Source of the DNA: Pecten maximus
Lineage: Eukaryota
Length of the DNA: 64,000 nucleotides
Assembly: GCF_902652985.1 (NCBI RefSeq)
Contig: NC_047024.1
Coordinates: 26,474,001 to 26,538,000, forward strand
Direction of reading: 5' to 3'
This document shows positions 6,344 to 58,540 of this stretch, one piece after another. The notes beneath the pieces are model-generated. The model was not told where the DNA came from. It ran no database searches and worked only from the letters and a program-made list of their open reading frames with translations. The translations under genes were made by a program, and so were the position numbers. The first letter of the stretch is position 1. Every line of letters begins with the position of its first letter.

Positions 6344-9300
6344 AATTGTATATGATAAAATCCTTCTTTTTCTATTTTCTGTACTTTATTAAAGTGTTAG
6401 TACAAACATGGTGTACAAGCATACATACTGTACTTGTCAGTCCCGTCCCGGGCGAAAGCAGCCCGGGACAGAGAATAGATGTTATTCCTCTGCCTCCAAA
6501 TGTAGTCTGGCGCCGTTAACAGATATAAGGTGTTCCTTATATAGATAGGAACATGCCAGTTGTTTACAATTCTTAACCTTTGAACTATATTACATAAAAC
6601 TATTACATGATCTCATAGGAAATAGCTGGCCAACGGATTAAAGGTACATAGGAAGGTCAATAGGTAATTACGTAAGTAAATCAATTAATACCCTTTTGCC
6701 AGGTAACACAAGGGTCACCCAGTTCCAAAGGGTCGGTTATTACATAAGTAAAACAATACACTTTGGCCAGGTAAACACATGGGTCACACCAAAGGGTTAG
6801 ACAGCTTATATATTAATCAATTTCACTTATTACACTACTATAGCACATGTAGATTTTTGAAAAAAACAACAACCAAAAAAACAATTCAAGTTAATTGATT
6901 TTAAATTAATCTTTGAAGCCGTACTCCTCCATTGTTCAATTTCTTAGTAATCATCACAGATATGCACTGCATAAAATATTGTCAAATTGTAGCAACTGTA
7001 CGCCATATATCATTATTATATATATGTGACCTCTTGTTACCAATTAAATATTGAAACCTCTTTAACAAGGCCCGTCAGACTAAACCGCCGATGGCCACTT
7101 CCTTCGTCACTTATACATATTGTATATCACCCGTAAACATACTCATTGCGTATGGAGAGAGAGCACTTCGTTCAATTTAGTATCGGAGGCGATAAAAACA
7201 AGATGGATGCCACTATTTCAAAGGCATATTTCATATGGTCCTATTAAAGACCGTTTAATTAAAGCTAAGAATTTAGTACACGAGATTTAGTACACGAAAT
7301 TTCGGACCATGTGGGGCGTGATCGGGTGACCAAACACAGGACAGGTCAGATGTCCAAATATCAAGCCTAATTAGCTTAACATTTGAACATCTTATCTAAA
7401 AGTTAATTGTTAAGAACGTTGATCAAAAACTAGAAATGTCTGGTGATAGGTTACAATATTTATGGATAATATTGATATTAATATTGCAAGTTAGAATATT
7501 TGTTTTCTTGAAAATTGTAACATAATGGGCTAAGAATAATGTTAGAATATGTATAACTTTATACATCATTTAAAATGGTAGCTATATATCAGAGACAGCA
7601 GGTCAAAGGTCACGTAATACTCGGTTGATGAAAACAACACCCGTGATTGACAGGTAAAGTGCAGAATCTGATACAGAGCTCAGGGGTGTAGGCCGCGTGA
7701 TTTCCTGAGTGATAGAACAGGGAAAGGGTCACTCCAATCTCAGATGGTATTGGTATAGTCATGATAAGCGATGACAACAAAAATAGGTTACTGGGAGGGG
7801 GAGCAATGATAAGGTACATTTGTTGTAGCACGTGTATTGTTAATGATATGCAAAGAGGCGGGGCGGAACAGGGGATATTAGGTATTAGAGGGAGAAAGCT
7901 AAAGGTGAGGAGAGAAAACAAGAGGGTCAGTTCAGTTCATTTATTCCGTAGGCCTTCCGGCCTTCAGGTGAAAATAACAGCATGTGATTATGCATCAATA
8001 CATCATACGAATACATGTAAAAAGGAGAGTGATCCGCGTACTATTGTAATATAAAAAATAATGATAATATTGTATTATGAATTCAATTACATGTAGTGGT
8101 AATTAGATCAATTTCAAATGCTAAATTACTGTGATATTTTGCCATAACTTAGAGCTACACTGTAGTTTAAACAGTGTTTATCTATATTCAATACAAGTGT
8201 ACATATTCATTGCAAATTGTACATTGAAGTAATAAACTATTGTAAACCATATGGTGTTGTTGCGTTACACAATATTAGTTAAAATAAACAATGGGCAAAC
8301 ATTTTTTGTCGACATTTTTTTTTTACTAAGAATACTTACCCTAAAAGAGTTTCAGCTGAACAGATCCTCATTTGTTTGTGTTAATTGTATGATAATATGA
8401 GACCTTACATAAATATACAATATTATAATATACAATGTTATAATATACAATGTCATTGTATTAAAGATTTATTCTTATCCCTTATATTTAGTGTTTTTTG
8501 TTGGCTCTTTTTGTTTTCTGGTTTACACAATGTGGTGTTATTTTTAAATATCTGACAATAATAATTATGGTAGTGTAAATGTTTATAAATGTGTGCCTTA
8601 ACCGCAATAAAAGGGCTCGCTGACAATGGGGTCGCCTGTCGCCATAACAACGTGCTTGTCAACTCATTTTCCTAAACTGGTAAATTAGCACTGCGTTTTG
8701 TTGGCATGGTTTCAGACACTGGCTGTCCTGTGTTGTAATAACTATGTCCTCTGGGAAGAGACATTATCTACACTGCTTCGGATAGTACGGGTCTCCCGTA
8801 TGTTAATTTAATCTTAGTTATAAAAGTGACAAATATAACGCCAATATTACCATTTGTCCATCTTGACACGTATTGTATTGTTTATATACGATTTAGAAAT
8901 CCGTGTAACGCTTTTAATGTGTTTGGGTGACTAATAAATCTGAGAAAACGAAATTGAAAATTGAATAACATAATCACCAATGATACATTATAGTTTTATT
9001 AACTTTTCTATAATTCCTATGGTCCGGCTCGCACGTCACTACCGGTTATATGCAGCCTTAAGTAGTAAGTGAGCTGATGTATTTAGCACGAGTTCTGCGT
9101 GAGTACGGCATACATTTAAGCATTGAACGGCTTTCAGTTGGCATTCATATTGACTATGAATGCCAACTGAAAGCCGTTCAATGCTTATATTTACCATCTG
9201 CGATTTTTTATTTGTTGTGCGATTTTTTTTTTTTTTGAAATTTTCAAATTCAAATTTCAGTTGGCAGTTCATAAGCTGGTGAACTCGCAACTGGATTGGT

Positions 9301-12129: not shown

Positions 12130-12950
12130 TAGAGAAGCGTATGTGAACCTACATTTACAGCAAAATTGCTACACAAACATATCTAAATTTCGTTTAGAAA
12201 AACTAAATAAGACAAGCACACATGTACCATCTGTTTGAATGGGGCATGTAACGTTTATCGTTTAAGAGATCATTAATATAATCAGAATACAACCAAGGGG
12301 AGATAATACTGCCCTGGCGGATCCACTGGCTTATCCAAAACATATTGCAGACGTTTTGATATTATCAACGCTAAACATATCTTCGTATAAAACATTATTA
12401 CCTGTACATATTTCCTATCAAAACCTAAACGTGCAAAAGTTTGAAACCCAACCCGCCAAGCCACACACAATCAAAGGTTTTAGAAATATTTAAAATACAA
12501 GAGAACAATTCAGCTCCGTACTCAATATTTTCTTGCCCAATATATGAAGTCATTCTTCTTTCTGTCATACATATTGTAAAGGATTGACATGGGAAAGATT
12601 TGACAACTCTCGTCAAAATATATTTTTTTATGTATAAGAGGTACATGTATAAGCATTATCGATCTATAACTATTTGGATCACTTTTGGCTTACCTTGACT
12701 TTTATATAAAGTGAAAATAAAATCCTGCTTTATCAATTCAATATTAATTGTTACTAAATAATTATACACTTTTTTTTTTACGAAATAAAATTTTAAAATA
12801 TTGTAAGATATTAGAATTGTACATATACCCGTGTCAGTGAATTGAATGAAAGTATTGTTAAACCCCTCAAATAGGTCACCCGTCATCGTCAAATAAGACC
12901 TCATTAAGGCGAAACGAACATTTGTTGACCCTTTGATAATTATTTTTCCC
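12130..12950 (-). pseudogene. Highly decayed LINE reverse-transcriptase relic
   Basis: SCILNISKTFDCVWLGGLGFKL matches the LINE RT motif (FLDxxKAFDxVxxxGLxxKL); many stops and frameshifts. Confidence 0.55.
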
Positions 12951-13004
12951 ACGATATCGTATCCACGATATTGATCTTAAATACCAAATTATTTACATGA
13001 CAAT

Positions 13005-13490
13005 TGGCCACTTTCCAATTCAGCGCCACCTGGCGGATCATAATCCAAGATGGCGGCGTATGGTGTGTCCGTGTCACAGCACATGTTTTTAGTGTTTTAT
13101 CAGCGCTACGCGTCAAATTAGACTTTTTCCAGAAAATCTTCGTGCTTAAATGCGTATATAGGTAAGTAAGTCTTTATTTTGGAATGATTTTATAAGGAAA
13201 TAAGGCGATATAAGACCGATATACACTTGTTCAAATACCCCAGGTGAGAAACCCTGCAGAATGCTATGTAACTCATTTACACAGGTGTAGCATTAAAAAT
13301 CGGTCATTGTATGATTCACGATTCATTTATTAGTTCTTGATTTGTATAGATCGAATAGAATCAGTCACTGCTTATGAAATGACGGCATCATAACGATGAT
13401 AGCGAAATAAATAACGATATATTTATAAATACTATTTGCACCAGGTAACATTACAGGTAATTTTGAAAGGTGTTTTGAATGCCGCCATTT
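13005..13490 (+). repeat. Left TIR (486 bp)
   Basis: Reverse complement of 18937-19422 with only 3 mismatches (13423, 13424, 13461); gapped similarity continues to GTCACGTGA at ~13529. Confidence 0.97.
13021..13167 (+). promoter_or_regulatory. Putative TIR-embedded promoter and non-coding first exon of the transposase gene
   Basis: CTCF-like CAGCGCCACCTGGCGG 13021-13036; YY1 motif CAAGATGGCGGC 13046-13057; CpG-rich stretch; donor AG|GTAAGT (GT at 13162); acceptor TTTTTCAG| at 13683, 7 nt before the ATG. Confidence 0.6.
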
Positions 13491-13690
13491 AGCCTATACT
13501 ATTTTTAGAGCAGGTGAAAAGTCACGTGATCTATCTAGGATAGTGATCTTCCATTGATTCATTGTATTTTCTATTTCATGTCACCTGACATTCGTATTTA
13601 AATAAATATTATAAAAAGTACTGGTATAGGCCTAGTGGTTTAAAAACATATTATGAAAACAAACTTTGATTTATATTTTTCAGATACAAA

Positions 13691-15184
13691 ATGCCTCATC
13701 ACTGCTGTGTGCCACATTGTACAAATAATTCCAAGACAAAAGATGGTTACTCTTTTCATACATTCCCTAAAGACCCTTCAGTGGCAAAAAAGTGGGTGAT
13801 TGCTATACGCAGAGATCAAGGTGCAGATTTTGATATCAACAAAGAGACAAGAGTATGCTCCGTTCACTTTAACGCAGACTCTTACCATCCTACCACTGCT
13901 ATTCATGTTCGAAAACGTTTGCGAGGGACTGCTGTACCATCAGTATTTCAATGGACTGTACAGAAACCCGTCAGAAGGAAACTCAGCCTTCTCATGAAAA
14001 GTCCAAATTGTGGAAATGTAGAATCCAACAATACAAGTTTCCCAGAAAAACATGTTTTGGAAAGCTGTAATAATGATTGTGATGAGCCTTTGCTTGTAGA
14101 CCAGCCTTTTAGTAGTGAGGATAGTTTAACAAATGTGGATTGGGCTGAATCTCCAGACAAGAGTAAATTAAAAGAAACCAACAGTGTTCTACTTCACATT
14201 AGGAACAAAGAGAAGTTTTCAATTCTACGGTTTTGTAATTCCGATTCTGATATCAGATATTACACAGGATTTTCATCATACCTAGCCTTACACTGTTTCT
14301 TCACATTCTTACAACCGGCTTGTAGCTTTTTGTACTATGTAGGGACAGACAACACATCTGAAGGGACACCTTACATATTTCTCAACAAACGTGGAAAGTC
14401 CAGATCCTTGTCGCCTATGGAAGAGTTATTTGTAACTCTTGTTCGTCTTCGGAAAGGTTTACCAGAAAAACATTTAGGTGACCTGTATAACCTTTCTGAG
14501 GGACATGTGTCAAAAATACTCAACACTTGGATTGCTTTTCTTGACAACAGACTGTCTTCGCTACCAATTTGGCCACAAAGAGATCATGTGAATAACACCA
14601 TGCCAGCAATTTTCAAGACATATTTTTCCTCTACTCGAACCATAATTGACTGCACAGAAATATTCATAGAACACCCATCTGCCTCGGAGTGTCAGCGGGA
14701 GACATTTTCCTCGTACAAACATCACAACACTGCAAAGGGTCTCATTGCCATCGCACCAAGTGGCCAAATCACATTTATTTCTCCGCTCTACTCTGGGCGA
14801 TGTTCAGACAAGAAAATAATTCGCCATTGTGGATTGTTGGACCTGATAGAGGAAGGAGATGGTGTCATGGTTGATCGCGGCTTTGACATTACAACAGATC
14901 TTGAAAACAGGGGTGCTCATCTTATAATGCCTGCCTTTTTAAGTGGAAAAGACCAATTCACTCCTGATCAGTTATCTCAATCCAGAGAAATAGCAACAGT
15001 GCGCGTCCATGTTGAGAGGGCTGTGAGGAAGATCAAAGAATTTGAAATTCTGAGACACACAGTTCCCATCACATTGTGTCCTATGCTTGAAAAGATATGG
15101 AATATTTGTGGACATTTGGCTAATTTCTCAGGGAGTGGAACATTGTTTAGACAACCCAAAGATGTCTCCACTTGTAAAGAATAA
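13691..15184 (+). CDS. Transposase: THAP zinc finger + HTH + DDE (Harbinger/ISL2EU DDE_Tnp_4 type), 497 aa
   Basis: THAP CCVPHC...W...VCSVHF...AVPSVF; HTH LSPMEELFVTLVRLR...VSKILNTW; catalytic IIDCTE, VMVDRGF, RVHVERAVRKIK; FSSYKHHNTAKGLI motif; uninterrupted ORF. Confidence 0.96.
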   Translation: MPHHCCVPHCTNNSKTKDGYSFHTFPKDPSVAKKWVIAIRRDQGADFDINKETRVCSVHFNADSYHPTTAIHVRKRLRGTAVPSVFQWTVQKPVRRKLSLLMKSPNCGNVESNNTSFPEKHVLESCNNDCDEPLLVDQPFSSEDSLTNVDWAESPDKSKLKETNSVLLHIRNKEKFSILRFCNSDSDIRYYTGFSSYLALHCFFTFLQPACSFLYYVGTDNTSEGTPYIFLNKRGKSRSLSPMEELFVTLVRLRKGLPEKHLGDLYNLSEGHVSKILNTWIAFLDNRLSSLPIWPQRDHVNNTMPAIFKTYFSSTRTIIDCTEIFIEHPSASECQRETFSSYKHHNTAKGLIAIAPSGQITFISPLYSGRCSDKKIIRHCGLLDLIEEGDGVMVDRGFDITTDLENRGAHLIMPAFLSGKDQFTPDQLSQSREIATVRVHVERAVRKIKEFEILRHTVPITLCPMLEKIWNICGHLANFSGSGTLFRQPKDVSTCKE

Positions 15185-16407
15185 AGACACATTGATAATG
15201 CTCTCATGTTTAATGAAATGTCAGATTCTTTTCATATATGAACACTTTATAATATGATACATATAAAACATGTTTCCATGGTGATCAAAGTTTCAAAAAT
15301 ATTATGTTGAATTTTGTACAATTTTTGTGACAATAAAATGCATTTTCAAATACTGTCATAGTAGTAATACCATGAAAAAATTCCAAGCAAAAAAGTTTGT
15401 AAATAATACATTTCTACAAATGAAATATCAGAAATTGTCCAACCGATATTCATATCATCATATATATGCATCAAACATTTATCACTAGTCATACATTGTA
15501 ATATTCCAGTTGTTGTCTAGATCTATAAAAATGTATTGAAGAAATTTTATATTATCACAAGTGATGATATAGGACAACTTGGATTTCACTGCATCCTTTC
15601 TTAAGTTAATCTTTTTTCACTGTTGAAAATATAAAAATAATCTGTCTAAATTATAAACTATATTGAACCATGTATATGAAATGTCAGCATAGCGCAGGAA
15701 ATGAATATTGTTCACATATTTTTAAACTTACTCTTTACAAGAAGTAATGACTATAAATAAATAATTTAACTAAGAAACTGTGAAATTGAATGTGGACTAA
15801 AAATACAAAATTCAATAGTAACAACTTTCATTTTAATTTTTACATGTTACAAGTCATAATTAAAAAATATCACAATTCAATGTCTTAATGACTATGAAAC
15901 TAATAACAGTATTTCAACAAAAATTCTGTACAGTACAATTGTGACAATGGACATAATTTGTATGACTTGTGCTTGTATTCAATTTTATGCTACCATACAT
16001 GGTTTAAGATTGTACTAGTGTACACTGAAACCATCAATATATATGTACATTGTGCTTTTAACACGAGACATGCATATGTCCTACACTAACTATCATATTG
16101 AACATTACATGTATATGTGTCAGTCACGAGTGCAAAAAAGGAATATAATGTATGAAATATCCTATGTAAAAATTAGAATAAATTTTGTTTTCCCCAAGTC
16201 ACTTTTGTACATGTTGTATGTAAAACCCATCTGCACAGACATGTGATAATTATGATAATCAACACATTGAAAGAATCTAGTCAACATGCGAAAATATATG
16301 GCTACACACCATTTTTCAATATACATAAAGTAAAGTTTGTATTTAAAATGTCAGTCTGGATGGGTATTGCATGTGCCTCTTGTACTAAACAATACAAGTC
16401 GAGACCT

Positions 16408-18126
16408 TCACTGATCTTTTGTGCGGAGACAATCAACAAAATGTGGGAGCAAATGGCTGAAATAGATACTGTTGAGTTTAGGCAACATATTAGAACAGAA
16501 AAACTCTGAATCACGATGTATCTCTACTATGGCAATGTCTTCCGGAGGAACGAATACTACAAAGTCACACTTCTCTATTCCACACAAATTCAGTTGTCCT
16601 TGCACTTGATAAAAGTAGTCGTGGGATTTTTTGAGTTGGATTTCACCAGTTGTCGGGTTTTTTTCCAAATAAAAGTTTTTCTCCTTCATTTGTGATAATA
16701 TACTTGTCTTCTTCTTGAATACAGAGTATGGACATTTGATTTCCACCAGTCTAATCTCATTGTTGACTTTTACTAGTCTATCAGGTGTCACTCCAAGATG
16801 GGGTAGTTTGGGGTTTACAACAAGACCAACTGGTGAACTAGCACATGGTTTTTCCTTTTGATACAAAGCCAAGGCTTGAGCTTCATAATTGATACCGTGA
16901 CGGACACTTTTTGACGTGAAAAACTTCTTCTTTTGTTGAAACGTATTCACAGGGTCTGTTGTATTTTTCAGGCGACAAAAAACACCAAAGTTAGATGCAG
17001 TAATACGGTATTGTCTCTCATTAAACCAGAATGAAGTCTTGCTCTGTAGCCTTGTATTTTTCTCTATGAACTTGGCTCTTTGGGTGTCTACACTCACATT
17101 AACTAGGTAATGTTGCTGGATGTCTGATTTGAGTGCCTGTGGCAATTCTATTTCACTGAAGCTAGTATTGTCAACCATCTCAAACAAATCTGCGTCTAGG
17201 TTTACATCACAGCGTTGCCTACATGCCACAGGTTTGAAATTGTTTTCTCGAATGGTGTCCAACACTGGAAGGTTTAAACCTGATGCATCAAACAGGTTAA
17301 CAAGTTTGGTTAGATCATTACCTGTAACAGATCTGGCAAACTCGGGCACAGGGTTATGAGTAGCTGCAGCTGCACACAAATCCTTCTTCACGGTCTTAAA
17401 CGGATCATGTTTGACAAAGTTGATGTCTCTGAACAGAAGAGGCTCATCAGACGTTGGTTTTCTAACATGCCACAATTGCAACTTGTCTGTGCATGTTTTC
17501 ACATCGGGCATTGTTTTTACATCCTGGCGGTGAAAGTCAATAAGACAGAACAATGTGGCTACAAGGTGCTTACATTGCCCATCTATTCCTGCTGGACATG
17601 AGCATGTCCCCCACTTTAATTTTGTTCCTCCATGTTTCAGGCACATGTATATGTTATAAGTTTTCTGCTTCATTGCAGCTTGGCATTGACCTCTGAAATA
17701 TATCAAGTTTCCAGTTGTGGTACTGCTCAAACCTGTTATTTTTCCCTCTCGGAATAGTGTCCAGCCTTCAACCCTGTGGCGTTTTGTTTTCACAAAGTCA
17801 AGAACACTTTCATCGATGTCCTCAATAGGGAAATCTTCACCCCATCCTGTCGTTGGTGCCACGCGTCCTTGAAAACTAAGGAGTCCTTTTTTTGAAATTA
17901 AAGGGTTTATTTTCATTAGTTCACAGCAGCCAGGACAAAACCATTTTGCAATGTTCTTAGCTTCTTCTTCATCAAGATCAACACAAGATGGATGGAACCA
18001 ATCATCACAGAGATCACATCTAACCATTATTTTTTCTGGATCTTCTGGGGTCTTGCAAACACAGTGCAGTGTACGGTCAGTAGATGCAGACTGGTTCATC
18101 TCCTCATGATTTCTTTTTCGAGACAT
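16408..18126 (-). CDS. PHD finger - SWIM zinc finger - YqaJ/lambda-exonuclease (PD-(D/E)xK) protein, 572 aa
   Basis: PHD C4HC3 CVC...MVRCDLCDDWFHPSCV...WFCPGC; SWIM CSCPAGIDGQCKH; YqaJ WFNERQYRITASNF, HGINYE, GVTPDRLV...VEIKCPY, YFYQVQGQL. True start is likely MSRKR at 18126, because the upstream MCLFIFVYLY stretch is a polypyrimidine tract and acceptor (exon starts 18145). Confidence 0.94.
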   Translation of the reverse strand: MSRKRNHEEMNQSASTDRTLHCVCKTPEDPEKIMVRCDLCDDWFHPSCVDLDEEEAKNIAKWFCPGCCELMKINPLISKKGLLSFQGRVAPTTGWGEDFPIEDIDESVLDFVKTKRHRVEGWTLFREGKITGLSSTTTGNLIYFRGQCQAAMKQKTYNIYMCLKHGGTKLKWGTCSCPAGIDGQCKHLVATLFCLIDFHRQDVKTMPDVKTCTDKLQLWHVRKPTSDEPLLFRDINFVKHDPFKTVKKDLCAAAATHNPVPEFARSVTGNDLTKLVNLFDASGLNLPVLDTIRENNFKPVACRQRCDVNLDADLFEMVDNTSFSEIELPQALKSDIQQHYLVNVSVDTQRAKFIEKNTRLQSKTSFWFNERQYRITASNFGVFCRLKNTTDPVNTFQQKKKFFTSKSVRHGINYEAQALALYQKEKPCASSPVGLVVNPKLPHLGVTPDRLVKVNNEIRLVEIKCPYSVFKKKTSILSQMKEKNFYLEKNPTTGEIQLKKSHDYFYQVQGQLNLCGIEKCDFVVFVPPEDIAIVEIHRDSEFFCSNMLPKLNSIYFSHLLPHFVDCLRTKDQ

Positions 18127-18304
18127 GGTTACTTGTTGTTGGTACCTATATAAGTAAACAAAAATAAATAGACACATGAAGATTAATAAGGTTAAAGCTT
18201 ATCAATAAATAATAGTACAGCTTATGATATCGTAACATATTAAGCTTTTCCATGGTAATATTAGCTGTTTATATTATAATAAACCATTAAGACTATATGC
18301 ATGT

Positions 18305-18683
18305 ATTTATTGCATTTTACTGACAGAAATCCTATATTATCACTAGTGATGATATAAGGTTGTTGACTGTACTGCATGGAAGAAATCTGATAAAATCACT
18401 AGTCATAATCAAATGTAAGATTTCTTGAATTCAATGCATTAACATAAAAGATACATTCAATGTGCTTTCAGATGTCTGCAAATGCATTTTAAGTTTAACT
18501 GCAAATGCAATAAACAGAAAATTTAATAATTTCTCGTTTGATATAAAATATATATCACTTGTATTTCAGATTTTATAATTAGATAACACTTGTGCTACAC
18601 ACTCGTGAAAATATAATTTATAAATAAATCTGTCATACTCATGAAATATATCTTATATTAAATAGGTAACTCTGAATATCCTC
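18305..18683 (-). repeat. Decayed palindromic repeat nested in the putative intron of the YqaJ gene
   Basis: Ends (ATTTATTGCATTTTAC... and ...GAATATCCTC) and internal TCACTAGTGA and CACTCGTGAAAATAT resemble the reverse complement of the 22152-22580 element. Confidence 0.5.
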
Positions 18684-18936
18684 ATTGATTCCTATGAGCC
18701 ATATATATATCAAAATATTCAAAAGCAGATTTTACCCTGTTCTTAAATAGGCCTAATAAACAACATAACTGAAGATATATATATTTGTCATTATAACATA
18801 AAACAGGGCCAAAAACAAAACATCAACATGACTGCTAAAAATCTTTTTTTATTTTTGGTTAAAAAAATATTTTCATCATCATGTTTTGTCATTATCAACC
18901 TCTTGATGTCACGTGACTCTACCTGCTCGAAATATA

Positions 18937-19422
18937 AAATGGCGGCATTCAAAACACCTTTCAAACTTACCTGTAATGTTACCTGGTGCAAATAGTATTT
19001 ATGGATATATCGTTATTTATTTCGCTATCATCGTTATGATGCCGTCATTTCATAAGCAGTGACTGATTCTATTCGATCTATACAAATCAAGAACTAATAA
19101 ATGAATCGTGAATCATACAATGACCGATTTTTAATGCTACACCTGTGTAAATGAGTTACATAGCATTCTGCAGGGTTTCTCACCTGGGGTATTTGAACAA
19201 GTGTATATCGGTCTTATATCGCCTTATTTCCTTATAAAATCATTCCAAAATAAAGACTTACTTACCTATATACGCATTTAAGCACGAAGATTTTCTGGAA
19301 AAAGTCTAATTTGACGCGTAGCGCTGATAAAACACTAAAAACATGTGCTGTGACACGGACACACCATACGCCGCCATCTTGGATTATGATCCGCCAGGTG
19401 GCGCTGAATTGGAAAGTGGCCA
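18937..19422 (-). repeat. Right TIR (486 bp)
   Basis: Reverse complement of 13005-13490. Confidence 0.97.
19260..19406 (-). promoter_or_regulatory. Putative TIR-embedded promoter and non-coding first exon of the YqaJ gene
   Basis: Mirror copy of 13021-13167: CTCF-like 19391-19406, YY1 19370-19381, donor GT at 19265-19264; acceptor TTTGTTTACTTATATAG| before 18145, 19 nt upstream of ATG 18126. Confidence 0.6.
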
Positions 19423-20224
19423 ATTAAGCAAACCTGTGTAACGACGTTCTTAAGAAGTTTACACAGGTTTTGCGGAATTCCATATCCTTTAAATCGCCGG
19501 AGTCACGCATGGTCAGGCTACAAAAATAAATATTCGTTAACATACAATACATGATGTTGTTTTAACTAATTACGTGTGTAAAACAAGTCCATTCTTGTCG
19601 ATTCATGTCCATACCTGGCTCAGGACTTTATTTCTGTTTACCTATGAGTTTGAAATAGGTTACGCACCGAGTTTTGTGGATCATGACACGGAGATCTTGA
19701 ATATGTAAGCCAAATTTATAAGACTGAGTCGAGCAAGAGGGTTACAAAGAAGATTGAACAAGGGATTATTGTTGTATTGGAATTAGTGATTAAGGATTGC
19801 TGGAGTATTCGCGAAAGAAGATTATTGGAGTTCTTACGAAAGGCTCAATTTTCGAAATTTTAAAGAACAGGCTATTTAAGTAGAGCAACAATGTTACTGA
19901 GTATTACATACTGGAAAAGACCCGAGATGTTCCTGGGGAGGGGGAGCCAAACCCATCTGTTCACTAACATAGTCCGATGGGAGACGATAATATGCACACA
20001 ACCGACCTAGGGGTATTCTCTAAATAATTGAATCATTCTTTTCTGGAACATTGTTGTCAGATCAAGGGGCGGGGCAGTTATCCACAAAAGCTGCCCCCAA
20101 AATTCATAGCTTACTTTACGTCACACCTACAGGGGCCTGGACATTACCTTACGGCCTGTTAAGATGGCGGTCTGTTCAAATCGCAGTACGTCCGTTGTCC
20201 GTCCTAATCTATATCCTCTAATCT

Positions 20225-56999: not shown

Positions 57000-58540
57000 T
57001 AAAAGTATGCATGACCTCAATCATGGCGATATTGGATGGCAGAAGGTTTTAAAGTGTGATGCTTCGGGGAAGGTGTTAGATGCGTTAGCAGTCGTGTGTA
57101 GGGGTTGCTGGTTCTTGTCTTTGTAACAATTGAATATGTGGAGTGGTAGCTGGGTCGCTGGTCGTGGGGGACTGCTACACTGTGGTGCATGAAGACGTTA
57201 TCTGTTAGTTTATATCTGTGTTCTAGTGTTGCTCATTTTCCTGTNNNNNNNNNNNNNNNNNNNNNNNNNNNNNNNNNNNNNNNNNNNNNNNNNNNNNNNN
57301 NNNNNNNNNNNNNNNNNNNNNNNNNNNNNNNNNNNNNNNNNNNNNNNNNNNNNNNNNNNNNNNNNNNNNNNNNNNNNNNNNNNNNNNNNNNNNNNNNNNN
57401 NNNNNNNNNNNNNNNNNNNNNNNNNNNNNNNNNNNNNGGTTTGCGGAGTACCCTGTACCTTTTTTATCGACTAAGTATGCACGGTCCTTGACTTGTTGAA
57501 GGCTGTGTTCAAGATTCCACATCAAAACAATGTTCATCTTGCTGTATTAGTTGTAAAGTTGACCGAAAATAATTTACTAGGCATTGAAAGACTCCTTCTA
57601 CTCTGATGTCATGCATCTGGTAGTTTTGTTTTTGTTTTTGTTTTTTGTTTTGTTTTTGTGGTATGCACGACGACGCATATATCGTGTGTTAAAATCGTTT
57701 TATAGGTTGAGCTGGTCCCCTTGCATGCTGATTGGTGTGTAAAGGTCGCTGACGAAGATAAAAATGGGGAAGGTCCTATGATAGATCCCTGTGGCATCCC
57801 TGTTGCATCTATTGCTGTTGCTTATCTGATAAAAAGTTGTTAATCCAATTTTGTGTTGTTCCTAGTATCCTATAATAGTGCCAAAGACATCCGAAAAGTC
57901 AAGTTGTGGCTGTTGTTGGTGCATCTGGTGATGTCGTCTACTGTAAGGAATAATTTGTTTCCACAAGAACGGTTTTTTTTAAAGCCGAGTTGGTTGTCTT
58001 GTGGTACGTCTGTCAGAATGTCACGTGTACAAGGGTAATGTGAGCGCAACTGGTCAGTAGTTTTCGGGTTTGGATCTGTCGCCTTTCTTTTGTATGGAAA
58101 CGCTGCAGTTTTTACTGCAGTATCAGTGGATTTTCTGAAACAGTTTGGTGAGTTTTGAGTTAATGCTGACTGTTTCTTTAAGAATGCCGATGGGCATTTG
58201 GTCTGGTAATAGTAAGTTTTCTGGGGTTGAGTTAGTCTGGTGCAATCCCTACTTCATAAACACTGATGGTGATGTTCACCACGGATTAGTATTCACTTTT
58301 CCATTTTTTCGGTATTGATATAGTATCCTCTGTCGTGAATACTGAGATGAATTATCTATTAAGTATGTTCGCCTTTTTTGTGTGTTGTGTTTCATATGAT
58401 GCCGTCTTCTTCAATAAGTCCTTAACTTTAATAAAATTTTAAAAGCGCTTTATATGTGTTGGCGCTGTATCTGACATGCTGTTGAGCTAGTTCCAGTATG
58501 CGTTGTTCCTGACTACTTTCCTAATGTCTTGGAAGGTCTC
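57000..58540 (-). pseudogene. Highly decayed intronic LINE relic
   Basis: MPQGSIIGP (RT PQGSxLGP motif) at ~57797 within a strand-biased stretch. Confidence 0.45.
57245..57437. other. Assembly gap (193 N)
   Basis: Run of N. Confidence 1.

What the first reader, a model, noticed from the sequence alone, without database searches (positions are those of the whole stretch)
13005..19422. Intact, apparently young two-gene ISL2EU-type transposon with very long TIRs
Seen: both ORFs are uninterrupted with all catalytic motifs, the outer 418 bp of the TIRs are identical, and the target duplication is clean, while every other coding TE in the window is decayed. Known: ISL2EU elements pair a Harbinger-like DDE transposase with a YqaJ exonuclease; to my knowledge the exonuclease's role has not been shown experimentally. 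Inference: a candidate active two-component transposition system suitable for reconstitution.
Basis: partly seen in the sequence, partly recalled or inferred. Interest (0 to 1): 0.8.

Follow-up and report, generated by a model that had tools for sequence, protein, structure and literature searches.

The report
Young, mobile two-gene ISL2EU transposon
This is an intact copy of a very young ISL2EU-type DNA transposon of the king scallop that is still transcribed and differs in position between individuals, which makes it a good natural system for asking what the element's own exonuclease does, though it belongs to an already known kind of element.

Summary
Window 13006-19421 is a 6.4-kb element with 489-nt inverted ends, and the outer 418 nt are identical. 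It carries two open convergent genes. One is a THAP-HTH-DDE transposase of 497 aa. The other is a PHD-SWIM-YqaJ (lambda-exonuclease fold) protein of 572 aa. All catalytic residues are present in both.

The genome matches Pecten maximus. It holds exactly 20 such termini, meaning 10 full copies at 8 independent sites. All are flanked by AATT. The eight core copies differ by 0-9 substitutions per 6.4 kb.

A paralogous empty site shows a single AATT. This window's copy is absent in another individual's DNA. An RNA sample carries a copy at a site that is empty in the assembly.

An RNA contig splices a leader exon inside the inverted end (donor at 13162) to an acceptor 7 nt before the transposase ATG. 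The same layout is seen in relatives from Pinctada and Dreissena. This explains the long ends: they carry the shared 5' exon and probably the promoter for both genes.

It meets the tested defining features of ISL2EU, so it is a new member of a known kind and is very probably still active. The nuclease's role remains inferred. I favour 5' resection at transposase-made breaks.

The parts
13002..13005 (.). Left copy of the AATT target.
   Evidence: AATT precedes GGCC in all 10 copies. The paralogous empty sites hold one AATT.
13006..13490 (+). Left terminal inverted repeat.
   Evidence: The terminal ~35 nt, an AGATGGC box and the splice donor are conserved in the Pinctada and Dreissena relatives.
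13006..13036 (+). Conserved terminal motif; the likely transposase binding and cleavage site.
   Evidence: There are exactly 20 hits in the genome at up to 3 mismatches, all of them ends of full copies. The block is conserved across three bivalve species.
13047..13057 (+). AAGATGGCGGC box. From memory it resembles a YY1-type core-promoter motif. It is mirrored at 19370-19380.
   Evidence: ATGGC is invariant in alignment A3. A promoter role is inferred, not shown.
13006..13161 (+). Non-coding leader exon of the transposase gene. It lies inside the inverted repeat; its 5' limit is unknown.
   Evidence: An RNA contig of run X8 covers 13002-13159 and then jumps to 13682.
13162..13683 (+). Leader intron of the transposase gene (GT..AG, 522 nt).
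   Evidence: table 5: skips 522, GT..AG. The spliced contig has depth 29, against 3-5 over the intron.
13691..15184 (+). Transposase CDS, 497 aa. THAP is at 13703-13948, HTH_Tnp_4 at 14405-14557, DDE_Tnp_4 at 14645-15124.
   Evidence: Invariant D320, K343, D373, D395, E442 and the THAP C2CH ligands in 31 relatives. It fits the published spacing signature. It is 100% identical to an NCBI Pecten maximus protein.
15185..16407 (.). Spacer between the convergent genes. This copy lacks 32 nt at 16204/16205 that all four sequencing runs carry.
   Evidence: table 5c.
16408..18126 (-). Accessory nuclease CDS, 572 aa. PHD is at 17926-18063, the SWIM zinc finger at 17566-17604, the YqaJ/lambda-exonuclease domain at about 16579-17028.
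   Evidence: It is 100% identical to a 572-aa NCBI Pecten maximus protein.
18146..19265 (-). Inferred leader intron of the nuclease gene, from the donor in the right repeat to the acceptor AG at 18147-18146.
   Evidence: Inferred. There is a polypyrimidine tract plus AG 19 nt before the ATG. Run X6 contigs end at 13164 and 18152, which is where an exon1|exon2 junction would make the assembly graph branch. The same acceptor layout is seen in Pinctada.
18937..19421 (-). Right terminal inverted repeat.
19422..19425 (.). Right copy of the AATT target.

Best explanation
This is one copy of a very young, autonomous, probably still mobile ISL2EU-type (PHIS superfamily) cut-and-paste transposon of Pecten maximus.

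Expression: each ~0.49-kb inverted end carries three things. These are the terminal motif recognised by the transposase, a probable promoter box, and a non-coding leader exon that ends at a strong splice donor 156 nt from the tip. The leader is spliced to an acceptor just before the start codon of the inward-facing gene. The two identical ends therefore drive both convergent genes. This is shown for the transposase gene and inferred for the nuclease gene.

Transposition: the THAP-HTH-DDE transposase binds the ends, excises the element and inserts it at AATT.

Accessory protein: the second protein joins a lambda-exonuclease-type PD-(D/E)xK nuclease to a SWIM zinc finger and a histone-tail-reading PHD finger. 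Its most likely job (inferred, about 40%) is 5'-to-3' resection of the 5'-phosphorylated DNA ends left by the transposase. Resection would steer repair of the donor break towards copying from the sister or homologue, so the element would be kept at the old site while a copy moves.
For: Identity:
- Domain hits.
- Invariant catalytic D320/D395/E442 and THAP ligands, and the published spacing signature.
- Nuclease residues E415, D449, E462, K464 and Q507 are invariant or nearly so and align to the LHK-Exo motifs.
- Fold match to LHK-Exo (TM 0.75) and lambda exonuclease (TM 0.62-0.64).

Youth and mobility:
- 20 termini give 10 full copies, with no short derivatives.
- 8 independent AATT sites.
- 0-9 substitutions per 6.4 kb among the core copies. 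A TT variant in the repeat is shared by three copies at different sites.
- A paralogous empty site with a single AATT.
- The window copy is absent in DNA run X4. RNA run X8 has a copy at a chromosome-14 site that is empty in the assembly.

Expression: a GT..AG splice 13162-13683 in an RNA-seq contig, about 6-9 times deeper than the intron.

Conservation of the design:
- Pinctada relative: 68-69% aa identity, 538-nt perfect repeats, donor at nt 158, acceptors before both ATGs.
- Dreissena relative: AATT flanks, about 350-nt repeats, donor at about nt 170.

Both genes evolve at the same protein rate (dN 0.244 and 0.247 against Pinctada).

Argument for resection rather than cutting: the sister group Spy transposes with the transposase alone (PMC11304231), so the DDE enzyme of this superfamily can free the element by itself. 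Lambda-type exonucleases load on 5'-phosphate ends (PDB 3SM4 title).
Against: - No de novo transposition event has been seen. Presence/absence differences come from single assembled contigs of public runs.
- The transcription start is not mapped. The X8 contig runs 16 nt beyond the element into its flank, so read-through from outside is possible.
- Splicing of the nuclease gene is inferred from contig break points only.
- The absent allele in X4 is not the clean AATT site.
- Nothing here measures nuclease activity, its substrate, or any contact with the transposase.
- A natural single-ORF fusion of HTH-DDE with YqaJ would fit a tighter, in-complex role better than a free repair factor.
Confidence: 0.78

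Rival explanations
1. The YqaJ nuclease is an obligatory part of the cutting machine, like TnsA in Tn7. The DDE transposase would cut one strand at each end and the PD-(D/E)xK nuclease the other.
For: - The nuclease has a PD-(D/E)xK active site.
- It has been strictly co-inherited with the transposase at equal protein divergence in scallop, pearl oyster, zebra mussel and chiton.
- A natural fusion of HTH-DDE and YqaJ in one 735-aa ORF exists.
- TnsA/TnsB is a precedent (own knowledge).
Against: - The fold is that of processive 5'-3' exonucleases such as lambda Exo and LHK-Exo, not of restriction-type endonucleases.
- Spy and PIF/Harbinger transposases of the same superfamily move without any nuclease partner (PMC11304231; PMC9179366 on Harbinger needing only the Myb-like protein).
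Confidence: 0.2
2. The second protein is mainly a targeting or recruiting factor, and its nuclease is secondary. The PHD and SWIM fingers would bring the transposase to particular chromatin, much as the Myb-like protein serves Harbinger or RAG2's PHD finger serves RAG1.
For: - The PHD finger is closest to the H3K4-methyl readers PHF2, SHL, BPTF and PHF8 (E 1e-15 to 1e-13).
- It carries Glu at the position of BPTF Tyr17. In BPTF the engineered Y17E change shifts preference to Kme2 (PMC4589357).
- PHD is found at the N-terminus here and at the C-terminus in a distant relative, P0022. SAP, SWIM or PHD modules recur in eukaryotic YqaJ clusters.
Against: - The nuclease residues are the most conserved part of the protein, whereas PHD is absent from most relatives.
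- The transposase has its own THAP and HTH DNA-binding domains.
Confidence: 0.2
3. The family is young but already dead, and the copies spread by segmental duplication or are assembly duplicates rather than transposition products.
For: Two pairs of copies share identical flanks, chromosome 6 (inverted) and chromosome 17 (direct). These are duplications of one insertion each. One member of the chromosome 6 pair has frames broken by indels only.
Against: - Eight sites have unrelated flanks, each with its own AATT.
- One site has a paralogous empty site.
- There is presence/absence variation in both directions between individuals.
- Six copies have both frames open.
- A spliced RNA exists.
Confidence: 0.04

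Closest known systems
ISL2EU group of the PHIS (PIF/Harbinger-ISL2EU-Spy) superfamily (PMC4482050, PMC4122938)
   Same: THAP-HTH-DDE transposase plus a YqaJ-exonuclease protein; AATT (A|AT|T) target; ends with GG after the target; found in animals.
   Different: - The inverted ends are 489 nt, against 6-259 nt in the 25 families surveyed.
- AATT rather than AT abuts the GG, so either the element ends in T...A or 4 bp are duplicated.
- The accessory protein also carries PHD and SWIM fingers.
- The ends carry a spliced leader exon, which is not described in the papers I could read.
PIF/Harbinger two-gene elements
   Same: A related DDE_Tnp_4 transposase and a second gene needed or kept by the element.
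   Different: The second gene there is a Myb/SANT DNA-binding protein, not a nuclease. The duplication is 3 bp (TWA). The transposase has no THAP domain.
Spy elements (sister clade; active cgSpy, PMC11304231)
   Same: Palindromic AT-rich target (AAATTT there, AATT here). For this element a no-duplication reading cannot be excluded from sequence alone.
   Different: Spy has a single gene, no THAP domain, no nuclease and short ends.
MuDR of maize (own knowledge)
   Same: Two convergent genes, each transcribed inward from a near-identical long terminal inverted repeat.
   Different: The transposase family is unrelated (Mutator), the duplication is 9 bp, and the second gene mudrB is not a nuclease.
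Lambda Exo / LHK-Exo / YqaJ phage recombination exonucleases
   Same: The fold (TM 0.62-0.75) and the E, D, ExK and Q active-site motifs.
   Different: The nuclease here is fused to eukaryotic chromatin and zinc-finger modules. No annealing-protein partner (Beta/RecT type) is encoded in the element.
RAG1-RAG2 / ProtoRAG
   Same: A DDE recombinase and a convergent accessory gene whose product carries a histone H3K4-methyl-type PHD finger, both lying between inverted ends.
   Different: The protein families are unrelated. The accessory protein here is itself a nuclease.

Membership tests
ISL2EU (PHIS superfamily) | DDE transposase alignable over the PIF/Harbinger/IS5 catalytic core | tested here: met
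   DDE_Tnp_4 6e-41 over the full profile. It fits the published spacing signature D(19-29)K(29)D(18-40)D(11-19)P(18-28)R(3)E, starting at D320 (the regex reported spacings 22, 29, 25, 14, 23, 3). D320, D395 and E442 are invariant in 31 relatives.
ISL2EU (PHIS superfamily) | THAP and HTH domains N-terminal to the DDE core | tested here: met
   THAP 8e-18 and HTH_Tnp_4 3e-13. The THAP matches THAP1/2/11 structures. The C2CH ligands and P26, W35, F60, P83 are invariant.
ISL2EU (PHIS superfamily) | Second ORF with a YqaJ exonuclease domain | tested here: met
   YqaJ 1.4e-13; lambda-exonuclease fold.
ISL2EU (PHIS superfamily) | Target A|AT|T with a 2-bp AT duplication | tested here: inconclusive
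   The AATT target is confirmed at 10 of 10 copies and by paralogous empty sites. Because AATT is palindromic, duplications of 0, 2 or 4 bp all give the same sequences.
ISL2EU (PHIS superfamily) | Inverted ends of 6-259 nt that start with GG | tested here: not met
   GG follows AATT, but the length is 485-489 nt. Relatives have 538 nt and about 350 nt. This is a survey range rather than a strict criterion.
ISL2EU (PHIS superfamily) | Placement inside the ISL2EU clade in a transposase tree with Repbase references | not testable with these tools
   No Repbase sequences are available. Most database relatives listed carry HTH_Tnp_4 and DDE_Tnp_4, and the full-length ones also carry THAP.
Currently active autonomous transposon | Several near-identical copies with open frames, insertion polymorphism, and transcripts | tested here: met
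Currently active autonomous transposon | Observed new insertion or excision | not testable with these tools
   This needs pedigree or somatic data, or an assay. The CGC allele in run X4 may be a footprint but is not decisive.
Lambda-exonuclease/YqaJ PD-(D/E)xK nucleases | Catalytic E, D, ExK and Q motifs, and the fold | tested here: met
   E415, D449, E462, K464 and Q507. TM 0.75 to 3SZ4 and 0.64 to 1AVQ. pLDDT is above 90 over the domain.
Lambda-exonuclease/YqaJ PD-(D/E)xK nucleases | Ring-shaped oligomer and 5'-phosphate-dependent processive digestion | not tested
   Only a conserved R371/R374-T376-S378 block was seen near the N-terminus of the domain. Its equivalence to the lambda Exo 5'-phosphate pocket is my inference.
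H3K4-methyl-reading PHD fingers | C4HC3 zinc ligands and an aromatic cage | tested here: inconclusive
   The ligands are complete. Of the four BPTF cage positions, only Trp (W43) is kept, and Met (M34) matches PHF2 at the third. Tyr10 is His and Tyr17 is Glu. Glu at position 17 gives Kme2 preference in BPTF (PMC4589357).

The most novel reading that the evidence does not exclude
In this bivalve lineage of ISL2EU the long inverted ends are expression cassettes, not just binding sites. Each would hold a promoter and a shared leader exon, so one sequence, kept identical on both sides, controls the transposase and the nuclease together. The accessory protein would be a chromatin-guided lambda-type exonuclease that reads lower H3K4 methylation through a natural 'Y17E-like' PHD finger. 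It would resect the donor break so that cut-and-paste becomes effectively copy-and-paste. The clustered T-to-C changes in one RNA-like contig would then be editing of double-stranded RNA formed between the two ends.
Probability: 0.2. Interest if true: 0.7.

Novelty: new member of a known kind. Interest (0 to 1): 0.5.

Why it matters
ISL2EU is the one branch of the Harbinger-like transposons that carries its own nuclease. I found no experiment in the held literature that says what that nuclease is for.

This family offers natural, unbroken copies of both genes, defined ends and target, evidence of expression, and evidence of very recent movement in wild animals. The question can therefore be put to a direct assay without any reconstruction.

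The leader exon inside the ends gives a simple reason for unusually long inverted repeats. It also gives a prediction to check in other long-ended transposons.

Tried and rejected
- Complex prediction (transposase 165-497 with nuclease 95-572, alignments A2 and A1) came back NOT FOLDED under a tool rule. There is no verdict, and I did not try another route.
I could not compare the other 70 or more families of this genome.
- A search for an alternative haplotig with the empty site of the window copy found only the window itself.
- A search for short non-autonomous derivatives using the terminal 31 nt at up to 3 mismatches found none.
- dN/dS against the Pinctada copy could not be computed because synonymous sites are saturated. 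Only dN is reported.
- The sigma-70 promoter and terminator scan is meaningless for an animal gene and is ignored.
- The Liolophura locus showed no long inverted repeat, and its nuclease gene is split. I took it to be a decayed copy and did not use it.
- Domestication was rejected, as was spread by duplication alone (see rivals).
- Very recent horizontal arrival from a sequenced species is unsupported: the closest foreign proteins are only 68-69% identical.
Full report
WHAT IS THERE

Window 13002-19425 holds a 6.4-kb element bounded by inverted repeats of 489 nt at 99% identity. Counted from the GGCC at 13006, the two arms first differ at positions 418, 419 and 456.

Inside lie two convergent ORFs:
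- 13691-15184 on the plus strand, 497 aa.
- 16408-18177 on the minus strand, 589 aa.

They are the only ORFs above 175 aa in the whole 64-kb window.

THE TWO PROTEINS

Transposase. ORF1 has THAP, HTH_Tnp_4 and DDE_Tnp_4 domains.
- Its THAP domain aligns to solved THAP1, THAP2 and THAP11 domains.
- In an alignment with 30 database relatives, the zinc ligands, D320, K343, D373, D395, R438 and E442 are invariant.
- The protein fits the published spacing signature of the superfamily (signature from PMC4122938).

Accessory protein. ORF2 most likely starts at the ATG at 18126. That gives the 572-aa product NCBI annotates for Pecten maximus, at 100% identity. It has three parts.
- N-terminal PHD finger. 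Its nearest solved relatives are PHF2, SHL, BPTF and PHF8, with E from 1e-15 to 1e-13. ING-type fingers match far more weakly.
- Central domain with a complete and nearly invariant CxCx7CxH SWIM finger.
- C-terminal YqaJ domain.

A model built on 22 sequences gives pLDDT above 90 over the nuclease domain. Its best structural matches are LHK-Exo (TM 0.75) and lambda exonuclease (TM 0.62-0.64). The active-site residues E415, D449, E462, K464 and Q507 are conserved and align to the LHK-Exo motifs.

THE HOST AND THE FAMILY

The assembly has 918,306,378 bases in 3,983 pieces. This equals the published Pecten maximus assembly (PMC7191990), and both proteins are named as P. maximus proteins.

Copy number:
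- The inverted repeat hits 21 places.
- The terminal 31 nt hits exactly 20 places at up to 3 mismatches. That means ten full-length copies and no short derivatives, plus one fragment on chromosome 13.
- Two pairs of copies have identical flanks, on chromosome 6 (inverted) and chromosome 17 (direct). Each pair is a duplication of one insertion. That leaves eight independent sites.

Intactness and age:
- Six copies, including this one, have both frames open.
- The eight core copies differ by 0-9 substitutions over about 6.4 kb. The chromosome 17 pair is older, at about 0.6%.
- This divergence is far below the 1.71% heterozygosity of the host (PMC7191990).
- Three copies at different sites share a TT variant in one arm, so that sub-lineage moved at least three times after the variant arose.
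- The window copy has two private substitutions, one of which changes residue 50 of the nuclease protein, and a private 32-nt deletion in the spacer.

The genome also holds at least 70 further transposase and YqaJ matches at 30-58% identity. Many have open frames and lie as adjacent pairs, so ISL2EU is a large and diverse group here.

TARGET SITE

Every copy is flanked by AATT on both sides. The copy on the small contig C595 sits inside another young repeat. Nine paralogous copies of that repeat carry a single AATT at the very spot. This proves insertion at AATT with a net gain of the element plus four bases.

Because AATT is its own reverse complement, three readings give identical sequences:
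- a 4-bp duplication with GG...CC ends;
- the canonical 2-bp AT duplication with T...A ends;
- no duplication, with TT...AA ends.

The published ISL2EU target is A|AT|T (PMC4482050), which fits.

MOBILITY BETWEEN INDIVIDUALS

Contigs of four public runs were laid on 12810-18800.

DNA run X4 comes from another sample. A 976-nt contig follows the left flank, with two SNPs, up to 13002 and then continues into the right flank. The window copy is therefore absent there. The joint reads ACA-CGC-TTAAGC instead of ACA-A-TTAAGC. This is either an excision footprint or an allelic variant on a diverged haplotype, and one contig cannot decide.

RNA run X8 has an element contig that runs 16 nt into a flank found in none of the ten assembly copies. 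That flank occurs four times on chromosome 14 of the assembly, each time followed by AATT and ordinary sequence. It is therefore a non-reference insertion.

Presence and absence thus differ in both directions.

EXPRESSION AND THE REASON FOR LONG ENDS

The X8 contig has depth 29, against 3-5 over the intron. It joins 13159/13161 to 13682/13684 across a 522-nt GT..AG gap. A leader exon inside the inverted repeat is thus spliced to an acceptor 7 nt before the transposase ATG.

The mirror donor in the right arm lies at 19265. A polypyrimidine tract and an AG at 18147-18146 precede the nuclease ATG by 19 nt. In run X6, contigs end at 13164 and 18152. These are exactly the points where a leader|exon-2 junction (TATATAG|GTACC) would make an assembly graph branch, given the 3 and 7 bases shared with the unspliced forms. 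This is indirect evidence.

The layout is conserved in relatives (alignment):
- Pinctada imbricata: proteins 68-69% identical, same convergent order. It has perfect 538-nt repeats, a GTAAGT donor 158 nt from the tip, and acceptors right before both ATGs.
- Dreissena polymorpha: AATT flanks, repeats of about 350 nt, a donor at about nt 170, and an acceptor abutting the transposase ATG.
- All three species share the terminal ~35 nt and an AGATGGC box about 45-60 nt from the tip.

I conclude that the long ends carry the shared 5' exon, and probably the promoter, of both genes. This recalls MuDR of maize (own knowledge). The transcription start itself is not mapped.

HOW IT LIKELY WORKS

Shown:
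- element anatomy;
- intact active sites;
- the AATT target;
- recent movement;
- a spliced transposase transcript.

Inferred:
- the THAP and HTH domains bind the conserved terminal block, and the DDE core cuts and joins;
- the nuclease resects.

For the nuclease I favour 5'-to-3' resection of transposase-made ends, which would bias donor repair to homologous copying (about 40%). Two observations support this. The fold is that of end-loading processive exonucleases. The sister group Spy moves with the transposase alone (PMC11304231).

The rivals are a TnsA-like second-strand cutter and a mainly chromatin-targeting role. The first is favoured somewhat by a natural HTH-DDE-YqaJ fusion in one 735-aa ORF on a public contig.

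The PHD finger has Glu at the position of BPTF Tyr17. The best BPTF match is in fact the Y17E mutant chain 2RI7, and that change gives Kme2 over Kme3 preference in BPTF (PMC4589357). This is a lead, not a result.

Both proteins have diverged equally from the Pinctada pair (dN 0.244 and 0.247), as expected if both serve the element.

COMPARISON AND VERDICT

The element meets the tested defining features of ISL2EU, with three caveats:
- the number of duplicated bases cannot be decided;
- the ends are about twice as long as the longest in the 2015 survey;
- tree placement against Repbase references could not be done.

The PHD-YqaJ combination already exists in databases as unnamed mollusc and arthropod proteins. 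I therefore file it as a new member of a known kind, with an informative sub-lineage design.

The assembly gap at 57245-57437 was left untouched.

Noticed in passing
window 13408-13461 (run X6): One contig of a run guessed to be RNA carries 11 extra T-to-C changes in 54 nt of the inner inverted repeat. None of the 20 repeat arms in the assembly has them. This looks like A-to-I hyper-editing of minus-strand RNA paired between the two ends, but an unseen genomic variant is not excluded.
   Followed up: partly
window 13002 / 19424 (run X4): The insertion-free allele reads ACA-CGC-TTAAGC where a clean target would read ACA-A-TTAAGC, a net gain of 2 nt. It is either a possible excision footprint or a haplotype variant.
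   Followed up: partly
window 15306-15751 (run X4, table 5c): A form of the element with 446 nt of the spacer replaced by TT is present at about single-copy depth in another individual. It is an internal-deletion derivative.
   Followed up: no
L022:812-858 and 7322-7900; L065-L073: The copy on contig C595 is inserted in another very young repeat. That repeat has at least 15 copies at 99-100% identity over 579 nt, and its left end starts TATGGAAACG. Its nature is unknown.
   Followed up: partly
L030+L031 (chromosome 7 copy), equivalent to window 18277-18283: This otherwise intact copy has an 8.3-kb insertion without any ORF of 150 aa or more, inside the inferred leader intron of the nuclease gene. 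The chromosome 17 copy L029 has a ~3-kb insertion near the equivalent of window 18846.
   Followed up: partly
L025/L026 (chromosome 6) and L028/L029 (chromosome 17): Each pair of copies shares identical flanks. They lie 28 kb apart in inverted orientation and 47 kb apart in direct orientation. L026 differs from L025 by indels only, and these break both frames. They are real segmental duplications or assembly duplicates.
   Followed up: partly
L074:1132-3339 (public contig of SRR14039878): A single 735-aa ORF joins HTH_Tnp_4, DDE_Tnp_4 and YqaJ domains. It is a natural fusion of the two ISL2EU functions in an unidentified organism.
   Followed up: partly
genome-wide: There are at least 70 further ISL2EU-type transposase and YqaJ matches at 30-58% identity. 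Many have open frames and lie as adjacent pairs, and several occur in multiple identical copies, so other families may be active too.
   Followed up: no
P0022: A distant YqaJ relative carries its PHD finger at the C-terminus instead of the N-terminus. This suggests independent gains of PHD by these nucleases.
   Followed up: no
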